Below, piece after piece: positions 9,358 to 50,736 of a stretch of DNA of 64,000 nt. The stretch covers positions 62,001 to 126,000 of the IMG/VR virus record IMGVR_UViG_3300027541_000009. One strand, 5' to 3'. Under the pieces are notes generated by a model. That model saw only the letters and a list, made by a program, of their open reading frames with translations. It ran no database searches and was not told the origin of the DNA. How positions within the stretch are numbered: the stretch's first letter is position 1; each line of letters begins with the position of its first letter. A program made the position numbers and the translations under genes.

Positions 9358-9918
9358 ATGTCTGCGTTTAAAATTGTACAAAATTTACCTACTTTGAGTG
9401 TTGCAGGAACTGGAATAGTGACTTCAACTCCTATTGCACTTAAATCCGGTTATTTGCGTATTGTACCAGAACAAAATACTTATATTGAATTAGGTACAAC
9501 ACCAGTAGTTAACACCTCAACTTCAATATGGATTCCTGCAAATGGTGAATTAATCTTAAAAGAAACTGTAAGATCACAACCAACTGTAGGAATACAAACA
9601 GGAGCAACTACAACAATTACAGTACCATCTGGAACTGGATGTGCATTTGAAGTTGGTGATTATGTATCACTATCTGGAATTTCTCCCGCAGGAATTAATA
9701 CTAATTTTGCACGAGTTTCCAATATTGATCAATCTACATCATATGATAGCCCACATCAAACCAAAATGGTTTTGAGTTGGGATACATCATCACAAGGTCC
9801 TGTTACTGTACCTACAGGTGAAGTTAGAAAAGTAACCAAAGTTGCTGCCTATAATGACAGTGGTTCCTCTTCAAAAATTCATATTACAGAAGTACAAGTC
9901 GTATCTAATTTCAGCTAA
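9358..9918 (+). CDS. Hypothetical beta-rich, probably virion-associated protein
   Basis: 186 aa Thr/Val/Gly-rich ORF whose stop overlaps the gp21 start. Confidence 0.7.
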   Translation: MSAFKIVQNLPTLSVAGTGIVTSTPIALKSGYLRIVPEQNTYIELGTTPVVNTSTSIWIPANGELILKETVRSQPTVGIQTGATTTITVPSGTGCAFEVGDYVSLSGISPAGINTNFARVSNIDQSTSYDSPHQTKMVLSWDTSSQGPVTVPTGEVRKVTKVAAYNDSGSSSKIHITEVQVVSNFS

Positions 9919-10571
9919 TGAAACTAATCACAGAAGAAATTGAACAGGTAGAAGTTATCGTTGAAGAAATCAACGGTAAAAAATCTCTCTACATTGAAGG
10001 AATATTTTTACAAGGAAATATTGCAAATAGAAATAGAAGAATGTATCCAATGGACACCCTGAGAAAAGGGGTTAATTTGTATACTGAAAATTATTTAAGC
10101 AAAGGTAGAGCAGTAGGTGAACTTGGTCACCCATCTGGACCAACTATCAATTTAGATAGAGTTTCTCACAATATTATTTCACTAAAAGAAAGTGGTAATA
10201 ATTTCATAGGCAAAGCTAAAATTTTAACTTCCTTACCAATGGGTAAAATTGCAGCAGGTCTTTATGAAGAAGGTGTAAAACTTGGAGTTTCTTCTCGTGG
10301 TGTTGGTACGTTAGTCCAAACCAATGAGGGTTACAGTAAAGTAAGTGAAGATTTCATGCTTTCTACTGCTGCTGACATTGTGCACGATCCATCTGCACCT
10401 GAAGCTTTTGTAAATGGAATCATGGAAGGTGTTAGTTGGTTATATGATTCTAAAAAACAAATTTGGATTTCTGAAAATATTAAAAATAAGATTGAAAATG
10501 ATGTAGTTTCTAGAAGATTAACTGAAGAAAGAAAATTACAACATTTTGAAAATTATTTAAAACTCATATAA
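9918..10571 (+). CDS. gp21: Prohead core protease gp21
   Basis: NRNRRMYP, GELGHP, VSSRGVG and DIVHDPSAPEAFV motifs. Confidence 0.94.
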   Translation: MKLITEEIEQVEVIVEEINGKKSLYIEGIFLQGNIANRNRRMYPMDTLRKGVNLYTENYLSKGRAVGELGHPSGPTINLDRVSHNIISLKESGNNFIGKAKILTSLPMGKIAAGLYEEGVKLGVSSRGVGTLVQTNEGYSKVSEDFMLSTAADIVHDPSAPEAFVNGIMEGVSWLYDSKKQIWISENIKNKIENDVVSRRLTEERKLQHFENYLKLI

Positions 10572-37343: not shown

Positions 37344-39640
37344 GCAATGGAACTAAAGTACTGAAGAGAAAAGGTCACACTGAACCACTTGACCTGAATA
37401 AGATTCATACGATGGTTGAGGAGGCATGTAGAGACCTTTCAGGAGTTTCTGCATCTCAAGTAGAAATGCAATCTGGGATTCAATTTTATGATGGGATTTC
37501 TACACAAGAAATTCAAGAGATTCTGATCAAATCTGCGTCTGATTTAATTGATTTGGACAATCCAAATTATCAATTTGTTGCGGCAAGACTTTTGCTATTT
37601 TCTCTCAGAAAGTCACTTTACGGAAAAATTAAAGATCACCCCTCATTCTTTGATCACATTGTAAAGTGTGTGGGAGTTAATGTGTATGATACAGAGATTT
37701 TAGAAAAGTATACTGAAGATGAACTCAATAAACTTGGCAATTATATTGACCATGATAGAGATTATCTCTTCACCTATGCTGGATTGAGACAAGTTGTGGA
37801 TAAGTATCTAGTTCAGGACAGAAGTACTGGGAAAGTTTACGAGACACCACAATTTGCTTATATGATGATTTCGGCAACAATGTTTGCAAATTATCCTCAA
37901 AGTACTCGTCTTTCTTATGTTAGAAAGTATTATGATGCTATTTCAAAACACAAGATTAATATCCCAACTCCAATTATGGCAGGAGTAAGAACTCCTACTC
38001 GTCAATTTGCATCATGTACTCTGATTGATGTTGATGATACTCTGAATAGTATTATTGCATCTGATGGTGCAATGATGAAATACGTTGCAGGACGTGCTGG
38101 AATTGGTTTGAATATTGGTAGACTTCGTGCAATTAATAGTAAAATTCGTAATGGTGAAGTTGTTTCTACTGGAGTAATTCCATTCCTTAAAAAATTTGAA
38201 AGTTCATTAAAATCATGCCACCAAGGTGGTCTACGTCAAGGAAGTGCTACTGTTTATTTTCCAATTTGGCACAAAGAAATTGAAGAAGTTATTGTTTTAA
38301 AAAACAATAAAGGAACCGAAGATAATCGTGTACGTAGACTAGATTATAATATTCAATTATCTAAAATTTTCTATGAAAGATTCATTCAAAATAAGGAGAT
38401 TACATTATTTTCTCCGCATGATGTCCCTGGACTTTATGATTCTTTCGGAACAGATTTATTTGACGACCTCTATATTCAGTATGAAAAAGATTCGTCCATT
38501 CCGAAAAAAACTGTCAAGGCACAAGAACTCATTCTTGATCTCCTCAAAGAACGTGCTGAAACGGGTCGTATCTATTTGATGAACATTGATCATTGTAATT
38601 CTCATAGTTCTTTCAAGGATAAGGTTAATATGAGTAATCTTTGCTGTGAGATTACTCTTCCTACTAAACCAATTCAACATATTGATGATGAAGATGGTGA
38701 AATTGCATTGTGTATTCTTAAAGCACTAAATGTTGGAAAAATTAAATCTGATGAAGAACTGGAAGAGTTATGTGATCTTTGTGTCAGAACTCTTGATGAA
38801 TTGATTGAGTATCAAGAATATCCAATCAAGGCTGCAGAGATTGCTACAAAGGCACGTAGAACACTTGGAGTTGGTATTATTGGACTTGCTCACTATCTTG
38901 CTAAATTGGGATACAATTATGATCAACCTGAGGCATGGAGTGCAGTTCATGGTCTTTCTGAGAGTATTCAATACTATCTCCTGAAGGCATCAAATCAACT
39001 TGCTAAAGAAAAAGGTAAGTGTGATTATTTCCATAGAACTAAATATGCAGATGGAATTCTTCCAATTGATACTTATAAGAAAGATGTTGATGAGATTTGT
39101 AATGATCCACTTCAGCACGATTGGGAAGAACTTCGTCAGAATATTTTGACAGATGGACTAAGGCATTCTACTCTTACCTGTATCATGCCTTCTGAAAGTA
39201 GTTCAGTGACTTCAAATGCAACCAATGGAATTGAACCTCCTCGTGGATATCTTTCCATTAAAAAGTCTAAAAAAGGACCTATCAAACAAGTAGTTCCCCA
39301 ATATACTACTTTGAAAAGTCATTACACTTTGCTTTGGGACATGAAAAATAACAATGGTTATTTTAATATTGTTTCAGTAATTCAGAAGTTTTTTGATCAG
39401 GCAATTAGTGCTAATTGGAATTATAATCCAGAGCATTATCCAAACAATGAAGTGCCTATGAGTGTAATTGCTCAAGATTTTCTGAGGGCATATAAGTATG
39501 GTCATAAGACTGGTTACTATCAGAATACATATGATGGTAAGAGTGATGAACCTAAAGAAGATAATAATGAAATTCAAAATCTTATTGATGAAATTTTAAA
39601 CAGTGATGATGAAGAAGCTTGCGATAGTTGTACAATCTAA
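37340..39640 (+). CDS. nrdA: Class Ia ribonucleotide reductase alpha subunit
   Basis: ATP-cone, PTPIMAG, SCTL, SNLCCEI and C-terminal CDSC; start set at ATG 37340. Confidence 0.97.
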   Translation: MSNGTKVLKRKGHTEPLDLNKIHTMVEEACRDLSGVSASQVEMQSGIQFYDGISTQEIQEILIKSASDLIDLDNPNYQFVAARLLLFSLRKSLYGKIKDHPSFFDHIVKCVGVNVYDTEILEKYTEDELNKLGNYIDHDRDYLFTYAGLRQVVDKYLVQDRSTGKVYETPQFAYMMISATMFANYPQSTRLSYVRKYYDAISKHKINIPTPIMAGVRTPTRQFASCTLIDVDDTLNSIIASDGAMMKYVAGRAGIGLNIGRLRAINSKIRNGEVVSTGVIPFLKKFESSLKSCHQGGLRQGSATVYFPIWHKEIEEVIVLKNNKGTEDNRVRRLDYNIQLSKIFYERFIQNKEITLFSPHDVPGLYDSFGTDLFDDLYIQYEKDSSIPKKTVKAQELILDLLKERAETGRIYLMNIDHCNSHSSFKDKVNMSNLCCEITLPTKPIQHIDDEDGEIALCILKALNVGKIKSDEELEELCDLCVRTLDELIEYQEYPIKAAEIATKARRTLGVGIIGLAHYLAKLGYNYDQPEAWSAVHGLSESIQYYLLKASNQLAKEKGKCDYFHRTKYADGILPIDTYKKDVDEICNDPLQHDWEELRQNILTDGLRHSTLTCIMPSESSSVTSNATNGIEPPRGYLSIKKSKKGPIKQVVPQYTTLKSHYTLLWDMKNNNGYFNIVSVIQKFFDQAISANWNYNPEHYPNNEVPMSVIAQDFLRAYKYGHKTGYYQNTYDGKSDEPKEDNNEIQNLIDEILNSDDEEACDSCTI

Positions 39641-39650
39641 GGAGAATTAA

Positions 39651-40793
39651 ATGGTAGAAGGGATGACAGTCTTTAATACAAATCAAGTAGATACACTTAA
39701 ACAACCAATGTTTTTTGGTGCTCCTTTAGGAGTTCAAAGATATGATACTTATAAGTATCCTGAATTTGATAAACTCACTCAACAACAACTTGGATTCTTT
39801 TGGAGACCTGAGGAGGTTTCTTTACAAAAAGATCGTTCTGACTACCTTACACTTCGTCCAGAACAAAAGCATATCTTCACTTCCAATCTAAAGTATCAGA
39901 TCCTCCTTGATAGTGTTCAAGGTCGTGGACCTGGTATGGCATTTATCCCATACTGCTCTCTTCCTGAATTGGAGGCAGCAATGACAGTATGGGAATTTAT
40001 GGAGATGATTCACAGTAGGTCATATACCTATATAATTAAAAATGTATATGCAGATCCTTCAGTAGTATTTGATAAAATCATTACTGATGAAATGATCTTG
40101 GAAAGAGCATCCTCTGTGACATCATCATATGATGACTTTATCAATTCTGCTCAACAATATGGAACTTCCAACACTTGGAGGTTTGCAAATGAAGGGGTTG
40201 ATTTGGGTAAAACCGAAAGAATCGAATTAAAGAGGAAACTTTACCGTGCAATTGCCAATGTCAATATTCTCGAAGGTATCAGATTCTACGTCTCTTTTGC
40301 TTGCTCGTTTGCGTTTGGTGAACTCAAGCTTATGGAAGGATCCGCTAAAATTATCTCTTTCATCGCAAGAGATGAAAACCAACATCTTACACTTACTCAA
40401 AAAATTCTGACTAAGTGGGCTCAGGGTGATGATCCAGAAATGCAAGAAATTGCTAAAGAAGAAGAATCTTATGTCTATAAAATGTTTGAAAACACTGTAA
40501 ACGAAGAAAAACGTTGGGCAGAATATCTGTTCAAGGATGGATCGATGATAGGCCTCAATGATAAACTTCTTTGGATGTATGTGGAATGGATTGCTAATCG
40601 TCGCATGAAATCAATTGGACTAAAACCAATGTTTGATATTCCAGCTAAAACCAATCCACTCCCTTGGACTGAACATTGGTTGAATAGCAAAAATATGCAA
40701 GAAGCTCCAATGGAAACTGAAAAAGAAAGTTATTTGGTAGGGGCAATTAAACAAGATATTGAAACTAATGCCTTTGCGGGATTTAGTTTGTGA
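39651..40793 (+). CDS. nrdB: Class Ia ribonucleotide reductase beta subunit
   Basis: FWRPEEV, LDSVQGRGP, EMIHSRSY, LEGIRFYVSFAC and ARDENQH. Confidence 0.97.
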   Translation: MVEGMTVFNTNQVDTLKQPMFFGAPLGVQRYDTYKYPEFDKLTQQQLGFFWRPEEVSLQKDRSDYLTLRPEQKHIFTSNLKYQILLDSVQGRGPGMAFIPYCSLPELEAAMTVWEFMEMIHSRSYTYIIKNVYADPSVVFDKIITDEMILERASSVTSSYDDFINSAQQYGTSNTWRFANEGVDLGKTERIELKRKLYRAIANVNILEGIRFYVSFACSFAFGELKLMEGSAKIISFIARDENQHLTLTQKILTKWAQGDDPEMQEIAKEEESYVYKMFENTVNEEKRWAEYLFKDGSMIGLNDKLLWMYVEWIANRRMKSIGLKPMFDIPAKTNPLPWTEHWLNSKNMQEAPMETEKESYLVGAIKQDIETNAFAGFSL

Positions 40794-40794
40794 T

Positions 40795-40823
40795 AAAAGA
40801 GGGGTAATAACCCCTCTTTTTTT
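40795..40823 (+). terminator. Intrinsic terminator after nrdB
   Basis: AAAAGAGGGGT-AATA-ACCCCTCTTTT followed by Ts. Confidence 0.85.
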
Positions 40824-40862
40824 ATGAAAAAGATAAATAAAAATAAAGATCTTTTTATATTA

Positions 40863-42734
40863 ATGGATAAATCACAAAATATTTACGAAGCTTATCTTCA
40901 GGTTTATTCAGAAGGTATTGCATCAGAACATCCTGATATTTCTGGACAGAAGGAATTTGCCAAAAAGGCAGATGAAGAACTTGCACGTAGAAGAAAGGAA
41001 AGAGCAAAAAAATCGGGACCTCAACTTCCTAAGTTTTTAAAAACTAAGAAGGGTATTCAAATCGAAGAAAAGGATCATGAGTACTCAATGGCTCGAACTG
41101 AACTTCATAAAATTGATGGTGCAGTTAAAAAACTTCGTAAAAAATTAAAAGGTGAAGGTAATATTGAAGCTTGGGTGCAATCTAAAATTACGAGAGCAGC
41201 AGATTATTTAGATTCAGCATCAACTTATATTGAGAGTGGTGAGCACGATCATATTGAAGAAGATATTATGCTTGAAAGAGAAATGACTCCTTCTGAAGTT
41301 AGAAAGGAGAAAAGACTTAAAGGTAAATATGATGATAGTGGAATGAAGAAAAGTATGATTGATCAATATGGGGAAGAAAAAGGAAAGCAAGTATATTTTG
41401 CAACTATCCGTAAGCAAGCAATGGCAAACTCATTTGAACCAGAAGGTGAACAACTTGATGAGAATCCACTGGTCGGATTAGGACTTCGTGCAGGTGCTGC
41501 TGCACTTGGAGGTTATCTAGCAAGCAAGGGCATGGAGGCAGCAAAGAAAAAAGTAGATTCTACAATTGATAAAGCAAGAAAAACTTCACCTATTGGTGGT
41601 GAGAGATATTCTTCACAATTAAATCAATTAAAGCAATCAATTGATTATGATGGTGAAACCTTAGAAGAGAAAAAACTTTCAAGAACTGAAAGAAGAGAAC
41701 AAAATCAAGGTAAAAAGAAAAAAGGTGGTGCAGTTCATGCTTACGATATGGACGAAACTTTGTTTGGTCATGACCATTCAAAAGTAAAAGTTCATGTAAA
41801 AGATGATAAAGGAAAGAGAGTACAGAGTCTCACTAATCAAGAGTTTAATACTCACAAACTTCCAAAAGGACATTCTTATGACTTTGGTGAATTCCGTAGT
41901 TCTAAAGTCTTTACAAAATCAGCTAAACCTAATAAAGGAATTATCAAAAAGTTAAAGAAGCAAGTAAAGCAAGGTAAAAACGTTCATATCATTACTGCTC
42001 GTGGTGATATGGATGATCAAAAAACCTTTTCAAAACACTTGAAAAAACACGGTATTAATATTGAAAAAGGTGGAAAAAATTATGTTCATGTCCATCGTGC
42101 AGGAAATGTAGAAGGTGGTGACATTGGTGAAAAGAAAAAAACCATCCTTCATGGTTTAATGAAGAAAGCAGGTACTAAAAAAGGTCATATGTATGATGAT
42201 GCGGCAAAAGTGCATAAAGCAATGGAAAAGGCCAATAAAGAAACAGTATCTGGTCCAAAAGTTAAAACTCACATGGTAAAACCAAATAAGGAGGGTAAAG
42301 TCGTGTCACGTTCTTATCAAGCAACTAAGGAAGAATTTGAAGTTATTTTAGATTTTATTCTAGAGCAACTTGTAGATCAGGGTTATGTAGAAAATCTAGA
42401 TTCTGCATTGGATTTAGTAGATACATTTGAAGAGGATTATGTAGATGATTTAATTTCACAGAGTATTGGATTACTTTCAGAATCTGTAGAAGATGAATCT
42501 GCTTTAAAATTTGGATACGTATCTAGATTTACAAATAGAACTGAAAATACAATCGAAGAGGATGACGAACAACTAACACCATATGAGTATTGGAAAACAT
42601 TTATTGGTGAAGATGATATTCAAGAAGAAGTTGAAGAAGAGGTTATTTCAGAAGAAGTAATTGTAGAGAATAAAAAAGAAACTACTTATGAACAGTGGAA
42701 AAAATTTATTGAACAAAGAGAAGTTCAAAAATGA
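40863..42734 (+). CDS. Modular protein containing a HAD-family phosphatase domain
   Basis: AYDMDETLF (DxDxT), IITARG and MYDD motifs within basic modules separated by IEE/LDE/LEE; start may be 40824 or 40863. Confidence 0.7.
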   Translation: MDKSQNIYEAYLQVYSEGIASEHPDISGQKEFAKKADEELARRRKERAKKSGPQLPKFLKTKKGIQIEEKDHEYSMARTELHKIDGAVKKLRKKLKGEGNIEAWVQSKITRAADYLDSASTYIESGEHDHIEEDIMLEREMTPSEVRKEKRLKGKYDDSGMKKSMIDQYGEEKGKQVYFATIRKQAMANSFEPEGEQLDENPLVGLGLRAGAAALGGYLASKGMEAAKKKVDSTIDKARKTSPIGGERYSSQLNQLKQSIDYDGETLEEKKLSRTERREQNQGKKKKGGAVHAYDMDETLFGHDHSKVKVHVKDDKGKRVQSLTNQEFNTHKLPKGHSYDFGEFRSSKVFTKSAKPNKGIIKKLKKQVKQGKNVHIITARGDMDDQKTFSKHLKKHGINIEKGGKNYVHVHRAGNVEGGDIGEKKKTILHGLMKKAGTKKGHMYDDAAKVHKAMEKANKETVSGPKVKTHMVKPNKEGKVVSRSYQATKEEFEVILDFILEQLVDQGYVENLDSALDLVDTFEEDYVDDLISQSIGLLSESVEDESALKFGYVSRFTNRTENTIEEDDEQLTPYEYWKTFIGEDDIQEEVEEEVISEEVIVENKKETTYEQWKKFIEQREVQK

Positions 42735-42991
42735 TCGATAATGCAGTAAGTGAACTTGAAAAAAACCTTCCTAAACTTAGGAAGGTTTCATACTCATCTA
42801 TTGATTCACTAATGAGACGTATTATGAGAAAGTATGATGTTACTGCAAAGGAACTTCATTTCTCTTTTAAAGATAAACATCATAAAACTCCAGATGAGTG
42901 GATCAAAGAAAAAAATTCTTTAAAAGAAATGAAGACTTTTGATGAGTTTTATGAAACTTGTATGTTATTAATGTTTAAAAATGAAATTTAA
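42731..42991 (+). CDS. Small hypothetical protein
   Basis: YSSIDSLMR...ELHFSFKDKHHKTPDEW module; C-terminal MKTFDEFYE. Confidence 0.65.
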   Translation: MIDNAVSELEKNLPKLRKVSYSSIDSLMRRIMRKYDVTAKELHFSFKDKHHKTPDEWIKEKNSLKEMKTFDEFYETCMLLMFKNEI

Positions 42992-43454
42992 TTTTTCTTT
43001 CGGTAAGAAAAGAAGAGGAATTATAGAGTGGGCAAAACTCTCTATAATTTTTGAAAGTATTATTGAGTTTTTGTCAAATAAATTTAATATTGATAAAAAA
43101 AGACTCTGGGATATTGTAGATGAACTTCAAAGAGAACTTTTAAAAAGAGGTTGGATTGATGATACTGTGAATGAGTATGTCATCAATACTCCAGAATTAT
43201 TGGATCAACGAGTTGAACGTGATGTAGATAGAGCAATCGAAGAATATAAACAACTGGAAGAATCAGAACCAGTGAATATGAAGAATGAGGTGATATTAAA
43301 AGAAATAGAAAAAGATAAGTATACTAAAACTCAAAAGAAGATTGTAAAGGATGCAGTATATTATGAAAAACAACCAGATGGCAGTAAGGCACAGGAACTT
43401 TTAGGTGGAGATATTGGTATAAGAGGAATTTGGGAAATTGATAAAGATAAATAA
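42981..43454 (+). CDS. Hypothetical protein, paralogue of 50071..50475
   Basis: Shares the FNFxFGKK start, LWDxxDE, VERDVDxAI and AQxLLGG. Confidence 0.7.
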   Translation: MKFNFSFGKKRRGIIEWAKLSIIFESIIEFLSNKFNIDKKRLWDIVDELQRELLKRGWIDDTVNEYVINTPELLDQRVERDVDRAIEEYKQLEESEPVNMKNEVILKEIEKDKYTKTQKKIVKDAVYYEKQPDGSKAQELLGGDIGIRGIWEIDKDK

Positions 43455-43489
43455 TATTAATAAAAGTACTTTTCAATGCTCAAAGAAAG

Positions 43490-45931
43490 ATGAAAAAAGA
43501 GAATTTGGATGATTTGAAGGTTTTATACGAGAGTGTCTATGATGAAGAATATTTAAATGAAGCACCAGGTGGTCCCGCAAGGTTTTGGGATAGCAATATG
43601 GGCAGGTTTGTCACAAAAGTTACAAATGCTGCTAAATCTGCAGGAGAGTATCTTGCCCCATCCCCAGAAAGGTCTGCTGAACCATCAGTTCGTGCTGGTG
43701 TTAGAACACCAACTACTGGATTTTCTCATGTCCAAAGTATGGATAAAGCACCAACATCAGCAGCAAGAGAAACTAGAGCACAAAGAGAAGCAAGAATATC
43801 AAGAGCACAAGATGCTGCAATTGCTGCTGCAGAAAGGGCAGAAAAAGCAAAAGCAAAAGAAAGAGCAGCAACAACTCCTGCTACAACTCCAGCAAGACCA
43901 ACAGTAACTACACCTGCGGCAACTTCTCCAGCAGCAAAACCAGCAACACCAGGAGCAGGAGCAAAGGTTGCACCAACTGCTGCAGCAAGACCAACAAGTT
44001 CACCTGCAACTGCAACGACTGCACAAAAGATTAAAGGTGGATTGGATGTTTATAAGTCTCAAGTTAAGTCTGGAGATATAAAAGGTGCAGAAGCAACTGG
44101 AAAATCAACTTGGGCATTGGCAAACCCAACACTTGCAAACAAACAAAAAACTCCCAATCCACTATTGCAAGATAATGAAATTAGTAAAATGAAATCTGCT
44201 TCAGTAATGAGGCAGAATAATATATCATTACCAGGTGCAAAAAATCCTACAAGTTCCGATATTTCAATGTCACAACAAAAAGCAAAAGCACAAGAAATTG
44301 TAAAGAGTGGTAAAGTAGAAGCATTGAAACAATCATTTGAATGGGGATCAACTTCTAAAATTGTTGATGATATTGCAGATGCTTATGCTTCAATCTATGA
44401 AGCAAAGAAAAAAGTAGACCAAGACAAAGATGGTGATAATGACTTTGCAGACGTAAGAATTGCAAGAATGATTGCCTCTGGTGTTCCAAAAGAAAAAGCA
44501 ATCGCAGCAGTTAAGAATAAACCATACAATGAAGAATTTGAATCTTGGATTGATTCTCTTGTGGAGGAAGGTTATGACCTTTCTGATTATACTATGGAAG
44601 AAATGTTTGATATTTATCTTAGTGAAGCAGAAGGTTCATATGGAGAAACTCCAAAGGCATATAGTGCAGCATTCAAAACCAAGATGACTGCAAAGAGAAA
44701 ACCTTTCCTCAAGAAAATGATGAGCAGAACTAATCCTGCAAATAGAAAGGATGCTTATGATTCTCCAAGAAAGGGCATGACTGCTTCTGATAGAGAGGAA
44801 GCAAGAGCTGGTGCAGCACATGGTTCCCCTAGAGGACATGATTATCCTTCACAAGGTCCTGGTGGAATAACCAAGAGTGCTAAGAAACTCCGTAAGCAAA
44901 AGGCAATGGGTGAGTTTGGTGAAGCATATGAAATTGATGAAGCAACTAGAATGAGAAAGGAACTCGGTAAGGAAGGTGAAATTGCAACTCGTAAGGAACT
45001 TGCAGCACGTTCTAAATCATTCAAACGTTCTGGTAGTGTAGATAAGACAATTGCAGCAGCAGAAAGAGGTGCCGATAGACCTTATATTAAGCACAAACGT
45101 GATGAATCTGATTCTGACAGAAAAGCAAGAGAAGAAAAGCAAAGTAGAACACTAAGAGGACTTGCTGCTTCGAGAAGAGGGTCTGTAAGGGATAAACCAA
45201 GAGCAGGAATGAGAGGATATGCTGCTAAGGTAGAGGGTTCTGATAGGGACCTACAATCTGCAAGAGGTTCTGCCAGAAGTGCAGGAACTCTTACCCCTGC
45301 GGAAAAGCAAAAGTTAAATGATAATTTTAATAAATATCAAAAGGGATCACAAGAACTATCCGAGAAATCAATTATGTCAAACAATCATCAAATTTACGAA
45401 GTAGTGGCAAGCTACCTGCTAGAGAATAATCTAGCAGAATCTGTTGATAGTGCAAATGCTATCATGGAAAATATGAGTTCCCAGTGGATTTCTGGCATTA
45501 TTCAAGAGTACAATGAATATGTAGAAAACTATAATATGTTTGTAGAATGTCTCGATGAATTAGGTTATGATCTATCAGAAATGTCAGATTACGATTTGGA
45601 AGAAGCATATGGTGATCTTTCAACTAGAAAACTGATTTTCACTGAAGCAAGAGCAAAGGGTGTAAAGGCATATAAGCCTGCTCCAACTCAAGCAGAAATT
45701 AGAGCAAATGAAAGAAAAGCTCGTAAAAAGCATGTAGAATCTGGTAGTGATAAGTCAGGTTATGGTCCTGATGAAAAATTCTATAAGCCAGAAGATAAGA
45801 AGGTTCCCGATAAGGAAACTGCAGAATGGTTCAGAAGAGTAGGACACAAGAAAAAGTTCGGCAGACCTTTTGGTAAATATCAACCAAGTGCAATCAAATT
45901 TGGTGATATCAAGAGAATGGGTCTCAAGTGA
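43490..45931 (+). CDS. Very large modular hypothetical protein (polyprotein-like)
   Basis: 813 aa with a Pro/Ala/Thr-rich linker, DKDGDNDFAD motif, repeated acidic GYDLS modules and basic modules. Confidence 0.75.
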   Translation: MKKENLDDLKVLYESVYDEEYLNEAPGGPARFWDSNMGRFVTKVTNAAKSAGEYLAPSPERSAEPSVRAGVRTPTTGFSHVQSMDKAPTSAARETRAQREARISRAQDAAIAAAERAEKAKAKERAATTPATTPARPTVTTPAATSPAAKPATPGAGAKVAPTAAARPTSSPATATTAQKIKGGLDVYKSQVKSGDIKGAEATGKSTWALANPTLANKQKTPNPLLQDNEISKMKSASVMRQNNISLPGAKNPTSSDISMSQQKAKAQEIVKSGKVEALKQSFEWGSTSKIVDDIADAYASIYEAKKKVDQDKDGDNDFADVRIARMIASGVPKEKAIAAVKNKPYNEEFESWIDSLVEEGYDLSDYTMEEMFDIYLSEAEGSYGETPKAYSAAFKTKMTAKRKPFLKKMMSRTNPANRKDAYDSPRKGMTASDREEARAGAAHGSPRGHDYPSQGPGGITKSAKKLRKQKAMGEFGEAYEIDEATRMRKELGKEGEIATRKELAARSKSFKRSGSVDKTIAAAERGADRPYIKHKRDESDSDRKAREEKQSRTLRGLAASRRGSVRDKPRAGMRGYAAKVEGSDRDLQSARGSARSAGTLTPAEKQKLNDNFNKYQKGSQELSEKSIMSNNHQIYEVVASYLLENNLAESVDSANAIMENMSSQWISGIIQEYNEYVENYNMFVECLDELGYDLSEMSDYDLEEAYGDLSTRKLIFTEARAKGVKAYKPAPTQAEIRANERKARKKHVESGSDKSGYGPDEKFYKPEDKKVPDKETAEWFRRVGHKKKFGRPFGKYQPSAIKFGDIKRMGLK

Positions 45932-46021: not shown

Positions 46022-46402
46022 ATGAATTATCAAGAGTTTAAAGATTTATCGGAAGCATATCAACAAATTTATGCTTCAATTGAAGAAGAATTAGACATTT
46101 ATAATACTGTAATCGAATTCCTTTGTCTAGAGGGTTATGCCTCTACTTTAGATGAAGCAAATTGGATGGTAGCAAATGAATTAACTGAAAAAGACATACA
46201 TGATATTTTAGAAGCTACTAAATGGATTCAAAAAGCTATTAAAAAACCAGGAGCATTGAGTAAATCTTTAGGAGTTCCTGAGGAAAAGAATATCCCTGCC
46301 AAAAAACTTGCTGCTGCAGCAAAAAAAGGTGGCAAGTTGGGTAAGAGAGCAAGACTAGCTCAAACATTAAGAAAATTAGCAAGAAGAAAAAAGAAAGGAT
46401 AA
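46022..46402 (+). CDS. Acidic leader fused to a highly basic module
   Basis: C-terminal KWIQKAIKKPGAL...IPAKKL...GKRARLAQTLRK. Confidence 0.75.
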   Translation: MNYQEFKDLSEAYQQIYASIEEELDIYNTVIEFLCLEGYASTLDEANWMVANELTEKDIHDILEATKWIQKAIKKPGALSKSLGVPEEKNIPAKKLAAAAKKGGKLGKRARLAQTLRKLARRKKKG

Positions 46403-46461: not shown

Positions 46462-46514
46462 TATTAAAGAGTAATAAAACTATTAAGATATAAAACTCTT
46501 ATTACTCTTTAATA
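46462..46514. repeat. Perfect 16 bp inverted repeat across the 3' end of the GIY-YIG gene
   Basis: TATTAAAGAGTAATAA (46462-77) and TTATTACTCTTTAATA (46499-514). Confidence 0.9.
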
Positions 46515-46914
46515 CTACTTCATAAATTGTAGTCTTTTCACTTGAGAAGAATTTTCCTTCAATATTGGTGTTGTAATATTCATCACTCATTAAAACATTT
46601 CTATTAAATTGTTCATACATTTCATAGTATGACATGGATTTTTTATGAGGACATAAGTACAAGATTTCTCTAGTAAAATTTTCTTTTCCTATTTCTTTTA
46701 CGTCTTTAGTTAATTCATCACAAGATCCGAAATAATTTTTCCAATTACTTTCTTTAGTTTTCCTTCTTCCTGTTTTTGGATCCTTTCTTCTAACCCAAAA
46801 ATGTTTTTTTCCAATATATTTTTTGTTGTTAGTTGTATTAGTAATCAAATATACAAAACCTTCTAGATTTTTTGTGACTTCAATAAAATCTTCATCATTA
46901 TATTTCCAATTCAT
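46483..46914 (-). CDS. GIY-YIG (Seg-like) nuclease, catalytic domain only; the sole convincing minus-strand gene
   Basis: FVYLITN...KKYIGKK, YFGS, REIL and YYN motifs; TATAAATT late-like box upstream on the minus strand. Confidence 0.85.
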   Translation of the reverse strand: MNWKYNDEDFIEVTKNLEGFVYLITNTTNNKKYIGKKHFWVRRKDPKTGRRKTKESNWKNYFGSCDELTKDVKEIGKENFTREILYLCPHKKSMSYYEMYEQFNRNVLMSDEYYNTNIEGKFFSSEKTTIYEVVLKSNKSFIS

Positions 46915-48156: not shown

Positions 48157-48816
48157 ATGAAACACTTTTATGTGTATTATTCCTATGAGGAATATGGAAG
48201 AGGTTATATTGGAAAAAGAGAATGTAAATGTCTTCCAGAAGAAGATGTAAGTTATTTTGGAAGTTTCAAAGATAAAACTTTCAATCCAACTCAAAAAATA
48301 ATATTAGAAACTTTTGGGAGTGTTGAAGAAGCACTTGAAGCAGAATGTGCTCTCCACGATTTTTATGAAGTAGATAAAAATCCACACTTTGCTAATAGGG
48401 CAAAACAAACTTCTACTGGATTTTATTGTAATAAAGGTGCTGGTGAAGAAGCAAACAAGAAAAGAAGTGAGTTGATGAAAACAGAATACAATCCTATGAG
48501 TAATCCAAAACTCAAAGAGAAAGCAAGAAAAAACTTGATTAGAACTTTGAGTAATCCAGAAATGAGAAAACTAAAAAGTAGAGTTGGAAAGAAAGCACAC
48601 AATCGTCCAGAAGTAGTTGAGAACCATAGACAGGCAGCACTCAAATCTCATCAAAATCCAGAAACAAAAAGAAAACATATTGAGGCAAAACTTGGTGAGA
48701 AAAATCCTTGTTATGGTAAAAAGTGGATTACAAATGGAAATGAAAACAAATACATAAACTCTATTGATGAAGTTCCAAGTGGTTTTTGGTATGGTAGAGT
48801 TTTCATAAATACCTAA
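48157..48816 (+). mobile_element. Free-standing GIY-YIG homing endonuclease (Seg-like) with NUMOD-type C-terminal repeats
   Basis: FYVYYSY...GYIGKR, YFGS, ANRAKQT and GEKNPCYGKKWITNG. Confidence 0.85.
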
Positions 48817-48831: not shown

Positions 48832-50034
48832 ATGCAGTTTCAAGAAGAAATCCTTGATGAAAGGACTTTGATGGTAGGGAAAAAAGTTAGACCTTCCGGA
48901 ACTATGAATATGCGTGGATCAGAAGGTGCCGCGAGAAAAGATGTTTCTCGTGCGGGGTTTAGGAAAAAAGGTCCCATTCAAGATCCAAAAGTAGAAAAGA
49001 GTGGAAAAGATGTTCCTGTTTGGGTAAGAACTCATAAGTCTCCTGGAGATTATGCTGCTCATACTGCAAGAAAGCAACATAGAGAGGGTGATAAGCCACA
49101 GAGTAAAGAATTAAAAAAACAGTTTGGTAAAACTGGTGCTAAGAAAGATTCTCCAGTTCATGATATCACTGTTGGTTCTCCAAAATCTAAAGTAAAAGAT
49201 CCCGGACAAAGAGCAAGACAATTTGTTGGTGCTCTCAAAGGCGTAAAAGATACTATGAAGTCAAAGAAAGGAGTTGCTACAAATACTCCTACTGCTATTG
49301 ATTCTGCTAAGTCTAAGGGTAAAAAGAGTAGAAGTGGTGAGGAAGGTGCAGAACAAAGAGGTAGAATTTATAAGAAACTAGGAATGGGAGAAAGAAATCC
49401 CAAGACTGGTGTTCAGATGGCGAAGTTGAGTGATTCCTTTAATGGAAAAACTTTTAGTGAGTTTATATATGAGTGTTATATTATTTTAGAAGCAAGAAAA
49501 TATACTAGAATCCGTTCTAGAGAAGATGCTGAGAAAATTCGACAATCACAAGAAAATCCAAATGCTTATAGATTAAAAAATAGACAAACTGCAGAAACTC
49601 CATATTGGGGACTAGAATCCAAAGAAAAAAGAAAAGACCAAGATGAAAGGAGAAAAGAAAATCTAAAAGCGATTAGTCATAAAGAGTTGGAAGATCATTG
49701 TAAAAGAAATTTGCATCCGGGTGATTGTAAAAAAAATGCGAATAGAGCATTAAGAATTGAAAGGGGAAGGAAAAAGTCTCAAAGAGATGAGGCAAAAAGT
49801 AAGTCTCAGGAAACAGGGCAAAAGCATGATGTAGATCATATTCAAGCACAACCAAATAGAAGAAGTGAAACAACAAAATCAAGATTTCAAGCAATTCATC
49901 CGGGTGATTCTTCTGATAATAGGAGAGTAATTCCAAGTAGAGAAAATCGTGAAAAAAATTCTAGTAATACTGAAAAATCAACGACTAGATCTGGTGCTCT
50001 TATGAGAGCCCTTCAAAGAGCTAGACAAAAATAA
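48832..50034 (+). CDS. Basic modular protein with a C-terminal HNH-like nuclease module
   Basis: Internal KTFSEFIYE; HDVDHI...DNRRVI...ENREK HNH-like pattern. Confidence 0.65.
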   Translation: MQFQEEILDERTLMVGKKVRPSGTMNMRGSEGAARKDVSRAGFRKKGPIQDPKVEKSGKDVPVWVRTHKSPGDYAAHTARKQHREGDKPQSKELKKQFGKTGAKKDSPVHDITVGSPKSKVKDPGQRARQFVGALKGVKDTMKSKKGVATNTPTAIDSAKSKGKKSRSGEEGAEQRGRIYKKLGMGERNPKTGVQMAKLSDSFNGKTFSEFIYECYIILEARKYTRIRSREDAEKIRQSQENPNAYRLKNRQTAETPYWGLESKEKRKDQDERRKENLKAISHKELEDHCKRNLHPGDCKKNANRALRIERGRKKSQRDEAKSKSQETGQKHDVDHIQAQPNRRSETTKSRFQAIHPGDSSDNRRVIPSRENREKNSSNTEKSTTRSGALMRALQRARQK

Positions 50035-50485: not shown

Positions 50486-50567
50486 GGGTAGGTGTCCGAG
50501 TGGTTAATGGAGGCGGACTGTAAATCCGCTGGCTCTGCCTACGGGGGTTCAAATCCCTCCCTGCCCA
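50486..50567 (+). tRNA. trnY: tRNA-Tyr(GUA)
   Basis: GGGTAGG/CCTGCCC acceptor, GCGGA-CTGTAAA-TCCGC anticodon arm, long variable arm. Confidence 0.95.
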
Positions 50568-50570
50568 CCT

Positions 50571-50642
50571 GGTCCCTTCGTCTAGCGGTTAGGACACCAC
50601 CCTTTCACGGTGTAGACACGGGTTCGATTCCCGTAGGGACTA
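50571..50642 (+). tRNA. trnE: tRNA-Glu(UUC)
   Basis: GGTCCCT/AGGGACT acceptor, CTTTCAC loop, GGTTCGATTCC. Confidence 0.92.
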
Positions 50643-50644
50643 TT

Positions 50645-50736
50645 GGAAGTGTGGCAGAGAGGTCTAATGCAGTGGATTGCTAATCCGCCGATGTACCTAA
50701 GTGCATCCGTTGGTTCGAATCCAACCACTTCCGCCA
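50645..50736 (+). tRNA. trnS: tRNA-Ser(GCU), CCA encoded
   Basis: GGAAGTG/CACTTCC acceptor, TTGCTAA loop, long variable arm. Confidence 0.95.

What the first reader, a model, noticed from the sequence alone, without database searches (positions are those of the whole stretch)
40863..42734. HAD phosphatase embedded in a modular cargo-type polyprotein
Seen: after several small basic modules separated by IEE, MLE, LDE and LEE there is a full HAD core (DMDET, ITARG, YDD), closed by an acidic module. Known: T4 Pnkp uses a HAD domain to heal tRNA ends cut by host anticodon nucleases. Inference: a phosphatase is released in the head and injected, perhaps for RNA repair or nucleotide-signal removal, complementing the tRNA array.
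Basis: partly seen in the sequence, partly recalled or inferred. Interest (0 to 1): 0.6.

Follow-up and report, generated by a model that had tools for sequence, protein, structure and literature searches.

The report
Late phage protein carrying HAD phosphatase
A river cyanophage makes, late in infection, a modular protein with an intact phosphatase and a head-cargo-like start; it is probably packed into the head and injected, but the proposed tRNA-repair role has no support.

Summary
Window 40863-42734 (+) encodes a 623-aa protein; the true start is M14 of the longest ORF. It has helical modules, a complete HAD core (D308-x-D310-x-T312, T391-A-R393, K437/K438, D458-D459) and an acidic tail.

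The catalytic residues are invariant in 55 aligned homologs. The AF2 model (pLDDT 88.8) matches only HAD folds. T4 Pnkp 3'-phosphatase is the top match (Z 12.6).

The family is large: at least 990 proteins and 440 IMG/VR loci. It has no Pfam family and no match in cultured phages.

New evidence supports a cargo reading:
- A terminator follows nrdB, and a T4-type late promoter sits about 30 nt before the ATG in 69 of 71 assessable loci.
- RNA-library contigs break at that junction.
- The N-terminal leader ends in I-x-E|A, like T4's capsid targeting sequence. Four other modular proteins of this phage share it.
- True T4-type CTS genes lie next door.
- A CTS-bearing cytidylyltransferase has orthologs detected in cyanophage virions.
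- Conserved [LIVM]-x-E sites lie in two low-confidence (probably flexible) linkers.

Packaging, cleavage and substrate are inferred, not shown. The genome has no RNA ligase or kinase partner, so tRNA repair is unsupported.

The parts
40795..40827 (+). Intrinsic terminator after nrdB: a hairpin followed by a T-run.
   Evidence: RNA fold -19.8 kcal/mol, z -6.0, 0 of 200 shuffles as good. The same hairpin plus T-run is seen in L004, L005 and L013. nrdB RNA-library contigs end at 40731, 40779 and 40803.
40832..40839 (+). Late-promoter-like motif GATAAATA (T4 TATAAATA; cyanophage NATAAATA), 31 nt before ATG 40863.
   Evidence: TATAAATA lies at -29 to -31 in L004, L005 and L013. NATAAATA lies 27-31 nt upstream in 69 of 71 assessable IMG/VR loci, 67 of them exact TATAAATA. 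Motif definition: PMC2984593 and PMC3037559.
40863..42734 (+). Coding sequence of the modular HAD protein: 623 aa from M14 of the longest ORF. The end coordinate includes the stop codon.
   Evidence: (P0002).
40863..40913 (+). N-terminal leader MDKSQNIYE|AYLQVYSE|G (aa 14-30). It is CTS-like, with candidate gp21 sites after E22 and E30.
   Evidence: Leader types across homologs. It is shared with four other module-D proteins of the genome. T4 IP leaders were read from NC_000866.
40917..41066 (+). Conserved basic N module (..ASEHPDISGQ..GPQLP.., aa 32-81, pI 10.0).
   Evidence: Conservation profile. AF2 helix with pLDDT 77-87. pI.
41067..41249 (+). Module A (aa 82-142), a helical hairpin. It also occurs in mosaic proteins of cultured cyanomyophages, for example S-SM2 SSM2_109.
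   Evidence: tblastn 52-73% identity in 27 phage records. HMM hit E 7e-25 to P0122. AF2.
41253..41276 (+). Linker HIEE-DIMLE (aa 144-151) with the invariant candidate cleavage site [LIVM]-x-E151.
   Evidence: 46 of 46 non-redundant homologs keep the motif. E is invariant in A2. pLDDT is below 50 in the full-length model.
41277..41438 (+). Module B (aa 152-205), a nearly invariant three-helix module that always accompanies the HAD domain.
   Evidence: Present in 118 of 121 sequences. Many columns are at least 90% conserved. pLDDT 90-94. No Pfam or PHROG hit.
41439..41669 (+). Variable, low-confidence region (aa 206-282). It contains a Gly/Ala-rich hydrophobic stretch and ends in T-L-E-E282, the second conserved candidate site.
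   Evidence: Low occupancy. pLDDT below 50 over most of it. [LIVM]xE is present in 35 of 48 homologs, and E282 is at least 90% conserved.
41670..42332 (+). HAD phosphatase domain (aa 283-503). Motif I is D308-M-D310-E-T312 (41745-41759). Motif II is T391-A-R393 (41994-42002). Motif III is K437/K438 (42132-42137). Motif IV is D458-D459 (42195-42200). A beta-rich insert of about 55 aa follows motif I.
   Evidence: Invariant residues. AF2 pLDDT 88.8. All 50 best structural matches are HAD, with T4 Pnkp phosphatase on top. Foldseek PDB and BFVD. ESM Atlas TM 0.83 to standalone viral HADs.
42303..42503 (+). Module D (aa 494-560), an acidic helical module. It recurs in four other leader-bearing proteins of this phage.
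   Evidence: HMM hits at E 3.5e-7 to 4e-4 in G000 ORFs 224271, 152601, 108022 and 105490. pLDDT 82-92.
42504..42731 (+). Acidic, mostly disordered tail with two conserved aromatic motifs (TPYEYWK, YEQWKKF).
   Evidence: (Y and W invariant). The family's C-tails have a median net charge of -24, against +28 for the HAD domain.
42929..42991 (+). Remnant of a T4-type CTS gene (MKTFDEFYET..., then a stop after 20 codons) at the end of the small ORF 42731-42991.
   Evidence: Intact counterparts exist: L005:8482 MKTYKEFCAEA (200 aa), L013 internal MKTFKEFLEEA, and L015, L086 and L091 with MKTF.EF... of 174-204 aa.
43490..45931 (+). Neighbouring 813-aa modular protein with a similar leader (MKKENLDDLKVLYE|S...), two copies of module D, and GATAAATA 36 nt upstream (43446).
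46022..46402 (+). 126-aa protein starting MNYQEFKDLSE|AY. Its leader is a hybrid of the T4 CTS and the HAD-type leader. It also carries module D and has AATAAATA 25 nt upstream.
9918..10571 (+). gp21-type prohead protease (Peptidase_S77), the enzyme expected to do any processing.
   Evidence: PF03420 at E 1.6e-34. The gp23 of this phage (11911-13320) has ...EREFLTE|ATPT, matching from memory the known T4 gp23 cleavage context.

Best explanation
The gene encodes a late-expressed modular protein of a riverine T4-like cyanomyovirus. Its only recognisable enzyme is a catalytically intact HAD-superfamily phosphomonoesterase. That domain is structurally closest to the Pnkp-type and class-IIIB branch of the superfamily.

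The most likely mechanism has five steps.
1. The gene is transcribed from its own T4-type late promoter, together with the virion genes.
2. Its short N-terminal leader (MDKSQNIYE|A...YSE|G) acts like the T4 capsid targeting sequence and brings the protein into the prohead core.
3. The gp21 prohead protease removes the leader. It possibly also cuts at the conserved [LIVM]-x-E sites in the two low-confidence linkers (after E151 and E282). This would free a very basic phosphatase (net charge about +28), with or without its acidic tail.
4. The phosphatase stays with the packaged DNA.
5. It enters the host with the DNA and removes a phosphate from a nucleotide or a nucleic-acid end at the very start of infection.

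Shown: the HAD fold and invariant catalytic residues; the terminator and promoter architecture and its conservation; the shared leader; the modular make-up; the neighbouring T4-type CTS genes; transcription in situ as a unit separate from nrdB.

Inferred: packaging, cleavage, injection, enzymatic activity and substrate.
For: HAD domain:
- Motifs I-IV are invariant.
- The AF2 model has pLDDT 88.8.
- All 50 best PDB matches are HAD. T4 Pnkp 3'-phosphatase 5uj0 scores Z 12.6 (rmsd 2.9, 134 of 142 residues), Pnkp1 4xrp scores 12.4 and 1ltq scores 12.2.
- PHROG polynucleotide kinase phrog_415 scores E 1.3e-4.

Late expression:
- A hairpin terminator follows nrdB.
- GATAAATA lies 31 nt before ATG 40863.
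- TATAAATA lies 27-31 nt upstream in 69 of 71 assessable loci.
- In this window the same motif precedes gp22, a Hoc-like head protein and the cytidylyltransferase. It does not precede primase, nrdA or nrdB.
- No sigma-70-like site is listed in the 70 nt before the gene.
- In four RNA libraries the contigs stop at the terminator and restart at 40854-40891.

Leader:
- Phi-x-E-[GA] occurs within residues 4-24 in 27 of 40 distinct N-termini, against 27 of 265 control ORFs.
- The leader persists when the following module changes.
- A leader HMM built from other contigs ranks the four other module-D proteins of this genome within the top 17 of 1475 ORFs. Each hit falls at residues 6-20.
- The 126-aa neighbour starts MNYQEF..LSE|A, bridging to T4 MKTYQEFIAE|A.

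The CTS system operates in this lineage:
- Intact T4-type CTS genes sit directly downstream of the HAD gene in related loci.
- The window's cytidylyltransferase starts MKSFRQFISE|A. It is the only one of 1684 ATG positions in the genome that fits a strict CTS pattern.
- Its orthologs in S-SM1 (MKKFSAFLNE|A) and S-SZBM1 (MRFRQFIIE|A) were detected in purified virions.

Protease and sites:
- gp21 is present.
- gp23 has FLTE|A.
- gp21 cuts after L/I-X-E (PMC9026906).
- E151 is invariant and E282 is at least 90% conserved. Both lie at the edges of low-confidence linkers.

Module sharing:
- Module A occurs in S-SM2's T4-GC119 protein. The S-SM1 member of that cluster was detected in virions.
- One homolog ends in a DPBB_1 lytic-transglycosylase-type domain.
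Against: - There is no virion proteome for any phage that carries this protein. It is absent from cultured phages.
- The leader lacks the aromatic residues at positions 4 and 7 that carry targeting in T4's CTS. It has S4 and I7 instead.
- About a third of the distinct N-termini have no Phi-x-E-[GA]. One subfamily (MSSHxIPPGEL...) has no obvious leader, although it keeps the late promoter.
- Leader-HMM hits to the other proteins are not significant one by one (E 0.13 to 5.9).
- A late promoter is necessary for packaging but not sufficient.
- The related mosaic protein SSZBM1_194 is not in the S-SZBM1 virion list. T4-GC119 was not detected in Syn9.
- The invariant E151 could instead be a structural residue of module B.
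- The contig breaks come from assembled RNA libraries. These cannot prove transcript ends and may contain DNA.
- The substrate is open. Structure points to Pnkp. More distant relatives in BFVD are fused to dCMP-deaminase-like or cytidylyltransferase-like domains, or are named dNMP phosphatases. A cap-like insert of about 55 aa would suit a small substrate.
Confidence: 0.5

Rival explanations
1. A late cytoplasmic enzyme that is not packaged. The protein would act inside the infected cell late in the cycle. For example, it could clean 3'-phosphate ends on replicated or concatemeric DNA before packaging, or adjust nucleotide pools. The flanking modules would be binding or regulatory domains. The N-terminal motif would be a conserved helix with no targeting role.
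For: Late promoters also drive genes that are not virion components. The Pnkp-like fold and the strongly basic domain fit a DNA-end enzyme. The leader lacks T4's targeting aromatics. Some subfamilies lack the leader. There is no proteomic evidence.
Against: It does not explain why the same leader heads at least four other unrelated modular proteins. It does not explain why the gene sits in a locus that repeatedly holds true T4-type CTS genes. It does not explain why Glu sites of the gp21 type are conserved exactly in the low-confidence linkers.
Confidence: 0.27
2. One reading: a T4 Pnkp-like end-healing enzyme that repairs tRNAs cut by host anticodon nucleases and works alongside the phage tRNA array.
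For: The three top structural matches are Pnkp phosphatase domains. There is a weak PHROG polynucleotide-kinase hit. By inspection, the T-A-R and G-D-x-x-x-K motifs resemble T4's S-G-R213 and D254...K258. In T4, pseT lies a few genes downstream of nrdB.
Against: There is no kinase domain in the protein. No AAA_33 kinase, Rnl2, Rnl1 or T4 RnlA homolog was found in the whole 284-kb genome. The profile-to-profile comparison with T4 Pnkp aligns only motif I, with probability 21%. The domain has pI about 10.2, against 5.5 for T4's. A lone 3'-phosphatase would destroy the ends that a host RtcB-type ligase needs (background knowledge). Late timing does not fit T4's early pseT.
Confidence: 0.1
3. A nucleotide-metabolism enzyme that belongs functionally with the upstream nrdA and nrdB genes, such as an NMP or dNMP phosphatase. 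It would be expressed with them and have no link to the virion.
For: nrdB is directly upstream in 52 of 55 assessable loci. BFVD relatives include fusions to dCMP-deaminase-like and cytidylyltransferase-like proteins, and phage dNMP phosphatases at E about 1e-3. There are weak Pfam hits to class B acid phosphatase, and Atlas clusters of the IIIB and DUF2608 type.
Against: A strong terminator separates it from nrdB, and it has its own late promoter. This arrangement is conserved in 69 of 71 loci. RNA-library contigs break at that point. This reading does not explain the leader, the acidic tail or the modular neighbours.
Confidence: 0.08
4. An injected protein phosphatase that resets host signalling. 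It would be comparable to the Legionella effector Lem4, whose HAD domain acts on phosphotyrosine.
For: The Lem4 HAD domain appears among the Foldseek matches (6cgk and 6cdw, E 0.03-0.06). Some HAD enzymes with small or absent caps act on proteins (background knowledge).
Against: These matches are weaker than those to Pnkp and to nucleotide phosphatases. No specific feature points to a protein substrate.
Confidence: 0.05

Closest known systems
T4 polynucleotide kinase/phosphatase (PseT, Pnkp), C-terminal 3'-phosphatase domain (PDB 5uj0, 1ltq) and bacterial Pnkp1 (4xrp)
   Same: It has the HAD fold with DxDxT, a Ser/Thr-x-Arg motif II, Lys, and a DD motif IV. These are the best structural matches (Z 12.2-12.6). 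In T4 the pseT gene lies a few genes downstream of nrdB.
   Different: It has no kinase domain and no ligase partner in the genome. Sequence similarity is limited to motif I. It has an extra insert of about 55 aa after motif I. Its pI is about 10.2 against 5.5. It has a late promoter, a leader and flanking modules.
T4 internal head proteins IPI, IPII, IPIII and Alt (CTS-targeted, gp21-processed, injected cargo)
   Same: It has a short N-terminal leader ending in I-x-E|A, a late promoter, and a gp21 protease in the genome. It lies in a variable locus that also holds genes starting MKT(Y/F)xEF. That locus lies near a tRNA array, as T4's ipI-III do. Alt shows that an enzyme can be such a cargo and be cut at both ends (PMC9026906).
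   Different: The leader has S and I where T4's CTS has the targeting residues Y4 and F7. The protein is much larger and is built of several modules, with possible internal cuts. Neither packaging nor processing has been observed.
Virion-associated cytidylyltransferase of cyanomyophages (T4-GC190: SSM1_190, SSZBM1_140; window 31495-32694)
   Same: It is an enzyme of a T4-like cyanophage with a late promoter and a CTS-type start. The orthologs were detected in purified virions. A distant relative of the HAD domain is fused to a cytidylyltransferase-like protein in BFVD.
   Different: It is a different enzyme family. Its leader is a strict T4-type CTS, whereas the HAD protein's leader is a looser variant.
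T4-GC119 mosaic proteins of cyanomyophages (S-SM1 SSM1_115, S-SM2 SSM2_109, S-SZBM1_194)
   Same: They are built from short charged modules that are shuffled between proteins. Module A of the HAD protein is present in SSM2_109. Modules of the window's 813-aa and 214-aa relatives are present in SSZBM1_194. SSM1_115 was detected in virions.
   Different: They contain no HAD domain. They lie between gp16 and gp17, not after nrdB. They have no CTS-like leader. Virion detection was inconsistent (not seen in Syn9 or S-SZBM1).
Class B acid phosphatase / HAD subfamily IIIB (AphA, PF03767) and DUF2608 (PF11019)
   Same: These are the nearest Pfam labels. Acid_phosphat_B scores E 0.03. Atlas clusters of standalone viral proteins of 200-220 aa carry these labels at TM 0.75-0.83. 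AphA aligns over 161 residues at Z 10.1.
   Different: The Pfam scores are below the curated cut-off. There is no signal peptide. The context is viral, late and modular.
Polyvalent proteins of phages and conjugative elements (Iyer et al. 2017, PMC5512222)
   Same: The concept is the same: one polypeptide of several unrelated domains, delivered with the DNA and possibly cut into pieces.
   Different: Only one recognisable enzymatic domain is present here. No zincin-type processing peptidase is present. The paper's main text mentions neither phosphatases nor cyanophages.

Membership tests
HAD superfamily phosphatases | Motif I DxDx(T/V), with the nucleophile Asp and the Asp+2 acid/base | tested here: met
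   D308-M-D310-E-T312. D[MV]DET is present in 120 of 120 homologs and invariant in A1.
HAD superfamily phosphatases | Motif II Ser/Thr, motif III Lys, and motif IV acidic pair | tested here: met
   T391, K437/K438 and D458-D459 are invariant in 55 sequences.
HAD superfamily phosphatases | Rossmann-like HAD core fold | tested here: met
   The AF2 model has pLDDT 88.8. All 50 best rows of the wide PDB search are HAD enzymes. Foldseek PDB and BFVD hits are HADs.
HAD superfamily phosphatases | Significant match to a curated HAD sequence model | tested here: not met
   No Pfam hit for the whole protein. For the domain alone, Acid_phosphat_B scores E 0.03 and PNK3P scores E 0.098, both under the cut-off. 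A PDB profile search found nothing.
HAD superfamily phosphatases | Phosphatase activity | not testable with these tools
   This needs an enzyme assay.
T4 Pnkp (PseT) end-healing enzymes | N-terminal P-loop 5'-kinase domain | tested here: not met
   There is no such domain in the protein. No AAA_33 hit in the genome. T4 Pnkp finds nothing by tblastn or phmmer.
T4 Pnkp (PseT) end-healing enzymes | Phosphatase domain homologous to Pnkp's | tested here: inconclusive
   It gives the top structural matches (Z 12.2-12.6, about 1 unit above other HADs). hhalign aligns only motif I, with probability 21%.
T4 Pnkp (PseT) end-healing enzymes | Partner RNA ligase in the same genome | tested here: not met
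   PF09414 gave no hit. PF09511 gave no hit, but its control was silent. T4 RnlA gave no hit by tblastn or phmmer.
T4-type CTS-targeted internal head proteins | N-terminal targeting peptide of about 10 aa with aromatic residues at positions 4 and 7 | tested here: not met
   The protein has S4 and I7 (counted from M14). The feature is met in neighbours: window 31495 MKSFRQF, window 46022 MNYQEF, G000 225641 MKTFQEF, L005 MKTYKEF.
T4-type CTS-targeted internal head proteins | The leader ends in a gp21 site, L/I-x-E, followed by a small residue | tested here: met
   N-I-Y-E22|A23, and a second site V-Y-S-E30|G31. Phi-x-E-[GA] occurs in 27 of 40 distinct family N-termini, against 10% of control ORFs.
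T4-type CTS-targeted internal head proteins | Late transcription | tested here: met
   The promoter motif is at -31 in the window and at 27-31 nt upstream in 69 of 71 loci, behind a terminator. Timing itself was not measured.
T4-type CTS-targeted internal head proteins | gp21 protease and gp22 core encoded by the phage | tested here: met
   PF03420 scores E 1.6e-34 at window 9918-10571. An ORF read as gp22 (by position after gp21 and its acidic, [LI]xE-rich sequence) lies at 10630-11856. gp23 has FLTE|A.
T4-type CTS-targeted internal head proteins | Presence in the virion, processing, and ejection into the host | not testable with these tools
   No cultured phage carries the protein. Only indirect links exist.
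Polyvalent proteins (Iyer et al. 2017) | Two or more domains of disparate known activities in one polypeptide | tested here: not met
   Only the HAD domain is recognisable. The other modules have no Pfam or PHROG family. One homolog adds DPBB_1.

The most novel reading that the evidence does not exclude
T4-like cyanomyophages of rivers and seas may run an internal-protein system like that of T4, with enzyme cargo. In this reading the HAD protein is a true polyprotein. The prohead protease cuts it at the leader and at the conserved linker sites (E151, E282). This releases several independent products, including a DNA-bound phosphatase. That phosphatase would be injected and would disarm a host defence that depends on phosphorylated nucleotides or on nucleic-acid ends. 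It would work alongside a co-packaged cytidylyltransferase.
Probability: 0.2. Interest if true: 0.8.

Novelty: new variant of a known kind. Interest (0 to 1): 0.62.

Why it matters
Injected internal head proteins are known almost only from T-even coliphages. There they are front-line weapons against host restriction (IPI*) or tools of host take-over (Alt).

The evidence here suggests that a large, unannotated family in uncultured cyanomyophages belongs to the same delivery system. The family has at least 990 proteins and 440 IMG/VR loci, and is transcribed in rivers. It would carry a new kind of cargo, a phosphatase.

The evidence also gives a simple sequence rule for finding head cargo in environmental phage genomes: a late promoter plus a CTS-like leader ending in Phi-x-E|A/G. 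That rule correctly picks the cytidylyltransferase already seen in two cyanophage virion proteomes.

If it holds, the work opens a testable route to the earliest minutes of cyanophage infection, and it names a ready-made set of candidate anti-defence effectors.

Tried and rejected
Searches that gave nothing or too little:
- Pfam on the whole protein and on three pieces: nothing above cut-off.
- PDB sequence-profile search: nothing.
- Foldseek against PDB: only weak rows (best E 2e-3), though they are HADs.
- hhalign of the HAD profile against T4 Pnkp: only 19 columns around motif I.
- tblastn of the protein against 50,697 phage records: only module A was found, never the HAD domain.
- Profile search of five cultured phage genomes (S-SM1, S-SM2, S-SZBM1, DSL-LC03, T4): no hit. 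There was no positive control, so this is weak.
- The listing of cluster members gave no names or accessions.
- The polyvalent-protein paper has nothing on phosphatases or cyanophages.
- A literature search for packaged HAD phosphatases found none.
- Window ORF 32691-34163 (start MSSEERIFLE|A): no match in S-SM1 or S-SZBM1.

Ideas rejected:
- A resemblance seen by eye between module B and the N-terminus of the virion protein SSM1_115. BLASTP gave E 0.40 and the HMM found no hit.
- SSZBM1_195, an abundant virion protein next to a tblastn hit. It is unrelated, and the hit lies in SSZBM1_194, which is not in the proteome list.
- Simple enrichment of [LI]xE in the protein. It is marginal, so only conservation is used as evidence.
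- An extra A in one low-depth RNA contig, in the A6 run at 41670-41675. It is treated as a likely error.

Weak or limited results:
- Leader-HMM hits to other proteins are not significant one by one. Only their joint rank and position are informative.
- The terminator after nrdB is not listed by the consensus scan, apparently because its stem absorbs part of the T-run. It was shown by folding instead.
- The count of '813-aa-like protein downstream' is unreliable, because that query shares module D with the HAD protein's own tail. It is not used.

Not run:
- The large representative search and complex prediction were not run. Their results would not have named a substrate or shown packaging.


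Full report
**Where the gene lies.** The window is bases 62001-126000 of a 284-kb IMG/VR virus record. That record encodes psbA and psbD and T4-type head genes, including a gp21 prohead protease at window 9918-10571. Its nrdA and nrdB DNA is about 70-73% identical to that of Synechococcus and Prochlorococcus myoviruses. It is therefore a large T4-like cyanomyovirus. The stretch occurs in 14 riverine metagenome runs and in 6 metatranscriptome runs.

**The observation.** The ORF 40824..42734 (+) follows the primase, nrdA and nrdB genes.
- ATG 40824 lies in the T-run of a strong hairpin after nrdB (-19.8 kcal/mol, z -6).
- The database copy of the protein is 623 aa long.
- Homologs align only from M14 onward.
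- Contigs from four RNA libraries begin at 40854-40891.

**The phosphatase.**
- Pfam sees nothing.
- The family is very large. At least 990 proteins score E <= 1e-3 among the 8000 candidates scored. In IMG/VR, 440 stretches encode a relative.
- All 120 listed homologs keep D[MV]DET.
- In a 55-sequence alignment of the domain, D308, D310, E311, T312, T391, A392, R393, K437, K438, D458 and D459 are invariant. These are the four HAD motifs.
- The AF2 model is confident (pLDDT 88.8, pTM 0.81).
- A Foldseek-independent search of 48,161 PDB chains returned only HAD enzymes in the 50 best rows. The top matches were T4 Pnkp 3'-phosphatase 5uj0 (Z 12.6, rmsd 2.9, 134 of 142 residues), Pnkp1 of the Pnkp1/Rnl/Hen1 complex 4xrp (Z 12.4) and T4 PNK 1ltq (Z 12.2). 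Other HADs followed at Z 11.4 and below.
- PHROGs gives weak hits to a 'polynucleotide kinase' family (E 1.3e-4) and to a family probably of the GmhB type (E 1.1e-5).
- The ESM Atlas and BFVD show that the domain, including its beta-rich insert of about 55 aa after motif I, exists as a standalone protein of 197-269 aa in many uncultured phages (TM up to 0.83, 29-33% identity). More distant relatives are fused to dCMP-deaminase-like or cytidylyltransferase-like proteins. Named phage Pnkp and dNMP phosphatases appear only at E 1e-4 to 1e-2.

I conclude that this is an intact HAD phosphomonoesterase of a viral clade near the Pnkp and IIIB branch. Its substrate is not known.

**Against a T4-type repair system.**
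- The protein has no kinase domain.
- The genome has no AAA_33 kinase, no Rnl2, no Rnl1 and no relative of T4 RnlA or of the Pnkp kinase. The Rnl1 family search had no working control, but the direct RnlA search was also empty.
- The profile comparison with T4 Pnkp aligns only motif I.
- The domain is very basic across the family: median pI 10.2 and net charge +28. T4's phosphatase domain has pI 5.5.

**A late gene separate from nrdAB.** Directly after the nrdB terminator comes GATAAATA (40832-40839), 31 nt before the ATG. T4's late promoter is TATAAATA, and cyanomyophages use NATAAATA (PMC2984593; PMC3037559).
- The same layout (hairpin, T-run, TATAAATA at -29 to -31) is present in three homolog loci from other samples.
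- It is also present in 69 of the 71 IMG/VR loci that can be assessed. 67 of these have exact TATAAATA, at a spacing of 27-31 nt.
- In the window the motif stands 12-40 nt before gp22, a structural ORF at 9358, a Hoc-like head protein at 34467, the cytidylyltransferase at 31495, and the two modular neighbours at 43490 and 46022. It does not stand before primase, nrdA or nrdB.
- In all four RNA libraries the nrdB contig ends at 40731-40803 and the next contig starts at 40854-40891. The depths on the two sides differ.
- These are assembled contigs from RNA libraries. They cannot prove transcript ends and may include DNA. A break at the same intergenic point in four runs is nevertheless what separate transcripts would give.
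- nrdB is upstream in 52 of 55 assessable loci. The position is therefore conserved, but the transcription unit is not shared.

**The leader.** From M14 the protein reads MDKSQNIYE|AYLQVYSE|GIASEHPD. Homologs begin in related ways: MDTPQNIIEAYLAVYREG, MSEIKDLQEAYLKVYSEG, MNSQDLQNLQEAYMEVCEG, MSSISNLKDIYENIYMEG, or shorter forms such as MSKFYTEG and MSRLYIEG. The leader stays when the next module differs.
- Phi-x-E-[GA] occurs in residues 4-24 of 27 of 40 distinct N-termini, against 27 of 265 control ORFs of the same loci (Fisher p 2e-14). The sequences are related to one another, so this figure overstates independence.
- Module D, the acidic helical module after the HAD domain, recurs in four other ORFs of this genome.
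- All four start with the same kind of leader: MKKENLDDLKVLYE|S (813 aa, window 43490), MNYQEFKDLSE|AY (126 aa, window 46022), and MDAQ(D/E)(I/L)RNLQE|AYMEVVE (214 and 244 aa).
- A leader HMM built only from homologs on other contigs puts these four within the top 17 of 1475 ORFs, each time at residues 6-20. No single E-value is significant. The joint rank of a set defined independently by module D is very unlikely by chance, roughly (17/1475)^4.

**Link to T4's capsid targeting sequence.** T4 IPII and IPIII start MKTYQEFIAE|A and IPI starts MKTFKEF... (read from NC_000866). The first 10 residues suffice for packaging. Residues 4 and 7 carry targeting, and residues 8 and 10 carry processing. 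gp21 cuts after L/I-X-E. Alt, an enzyme, is packaged and cut at both ends (PMC9026906; PMC3012670).
- This phage's gp23 has ...EREFLTE|ATPT. This matches, from memory, the T4 gp23 site context, so the same specificity is likely.
- In related loci the gene just after the HAD gene starts MKTYKEFCAE|A, MKTFKEFIEE|A or MKTFLEFYEE|A and is 174-204 aa long. In the window only a remnant is left (MKTFDEFYET, then a stop, at 42929-42991).
- The 126-aa neighbour (MNYQEF-KD-LSE|AY) joins the T4-type start to the HAD-type leader.
- The window's cytidylyltransferase (31495-32694) starts MKSFRQFISE|A. It is the only one of 1684 ATG positions in the genome that fits a strict CTS pattern.
- Its orthologs start MKKFSAFLNE|A in S-SM1 (SSM1_190, T4-GC190) and MRFRQFIIE|A in S-SZBM1 (SSZBM1_140). 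Both were found in purified virions: 25 counts in Table S8 of PMC3037559, and Table 1 of PMC9146016.
- SSM1_192 (T4-GC1455), also detected in virions, starts MLSFKELQE.

The CTS logic therefore seems to operate in cyanomyophages, and for an enzyme. The HAD protein's own leader keeps the processing part (I-x-E|A). It has S and I where T4 has Y4 and F7. It is CTS-like, not a strict CTS.

**Is it a polyprotein?** The full-length AF2 model is numbered from M14, so its positions equal ORF positions minus 13.
- Folded modules: N (20-50), A (57-124), B (141-191, pLDDT above 90), HAD (288-485) and D (487-540).
- Low-confidence linkers: 53-73, 128-137, 192-266 and 541-603.
- Across 48 non-redundant homologs only two columns carry [LIVM]xE in more than 90% of sequences. 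One is the catalytic DMDE. The other is the site ending at E151, in 46 of 46, with variable P2 and P1' residues. It lies at the end of the 128-137 linker. That Glu is invariant in 56 of 56 sequences.
- The site ending at E282, just before the HAD domain, is present in 35 of 48 and its Glu is at least 90% conserved. LDE213 is present in 19 of 29. IEE80-82 is not conserved.

This pattern is what protease sites would give. E151 could equally be the first structural residue of module B. I rate internal cleavage at about 0.35, and leader removal higher.

**Module network.**
- Module A (aa 82-142) is 52-73% identical to a segment of mosaic proteins in cultured cyanomyophages, for example S-SM2 SSM2_109, which lies between gp16 and gp17.
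- That gene cluster (T4-GC119) varies from 276 to 2985 nt between phages. Its S-SM1 member was detected in virions (13 counts). It was not detected in Syn9, and the similar SSZBM1_194 is not in the S-SZBM1 list.
- Other modules of the window's leader proteins recur in SSZBM1_194.
- One HAD-family member ends in a DPBB_1 lytic-transglycosylase-type domain.
- These links are indirect.

**Charge.** The family's HAD domains carry a median net charge of +28 and the C-terminal tails a median of -24. A basic enzyme would sit on DNA in the head, as T4's basic internal proteins do. The acidic tail might neutralise it until it is cut off. This is inference only.

**Verdict.** I put packaging at about 0.6, and the whole chain as stated at 0.5. 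The main rival is a late cytoplasmic phosphatase that is not packaged.

No cultured phage carries the gene, and I found no paper describing a packaged HAD phosphatase. I class the finding as a new variant of a known kind: CTS-directed internal head proteins.

Noticed in passing
window 31495-32694: The cytidylyltransferase gene starts MKSFRQFISE|A, a near-perfect T4 capsid targeting sequence. It has GATAAATA 16 nt upstream. Its orthologs in S-SM1 (MKKFSAFLNE|A) and S-SZBM1 (MRFRQFIIE|A) were detected in purified virions, yet neither proteome text read here comments on the leader.
   Followed up: yes
window 43490-45931 and 46022-46402; G000 152601-153335, 224271-224915, 225641-226249: A set of late modular proteins shares the leader and module D. 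One of them also shares a KKLRKQKAMGE module. G000 225641 starts MKTFQEF, like T4 IPI. The 244-aa member lies between psbA and psbD.
   Followed up: partly
window 42731-42991 (remnant at 42929-42991): The small ORF after the HAD gene ends in MKTFDEFYET followed by a stop. This looks like the stump of a T4-type CTS gene that is intact in related contigs (L005, L013, L015, L086, L091). The spot is a hyperplastic internal-protein locus.
   Followed up: yes
window 1876-2373, 32691-34163, 48832-50034: Further genes preceded by NATAAATA, or adjacent to the cytidylyltransferase, have CTS-like starts: MKSYSELSKIFE, MSSEERIFLE|A and MQFQEEILDE. The 400-aa protein at 48832 has no PHROG family.
   Followed up: no
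window 50486-55753: An array of 12 tRNA genes lies a few kb downstream of the leader-protein cluster. This echoes T4, where ipI, ipII and ipIII flank the tRNA region.
   Followed up: partly
window 46483-46914 (-) and 48157-48816 (+): Homing-endonuclease-like ORFs (phrog_314, 7363 and 447) flank the cluster. This is consistent with a mobile, variable region.
   Followed up: no
window 41670-41675: One low-depth contig of RNA run X19 has an extra A in the A6 run right after the LEE282 codons. It is probably an assembly or sequencing error.
   Followed up: partly
window 39600-44600 in RNA runs X15, X17, X18, X19: The locus is present in riverine and aquatic metatranscriptome assemblies. In X15 the HAD gene contigs are 4-9 times deeper than the nrdB contig. 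In X17 and X18 they are shallower. X17 and X18 also show a gap of about 330-480 nt (none listed from 43154/43021 to 43485/43499) ending just before the 43490 gene.
   Followed up: partly
L008 (S-SM1 97998-98534, T4-GC403), L012 (SSZBM1_195), window 9358-9918: S-SM1 T4-GC403 was found in virions with 60 counts, and SSZBM1_195 is the third most abundant protein in S-SZBM1 virions. The window ORF 9358-9918 looks related by eye and also has a late promoter. It is unrelated to the HAD protein.
   Followed up: no
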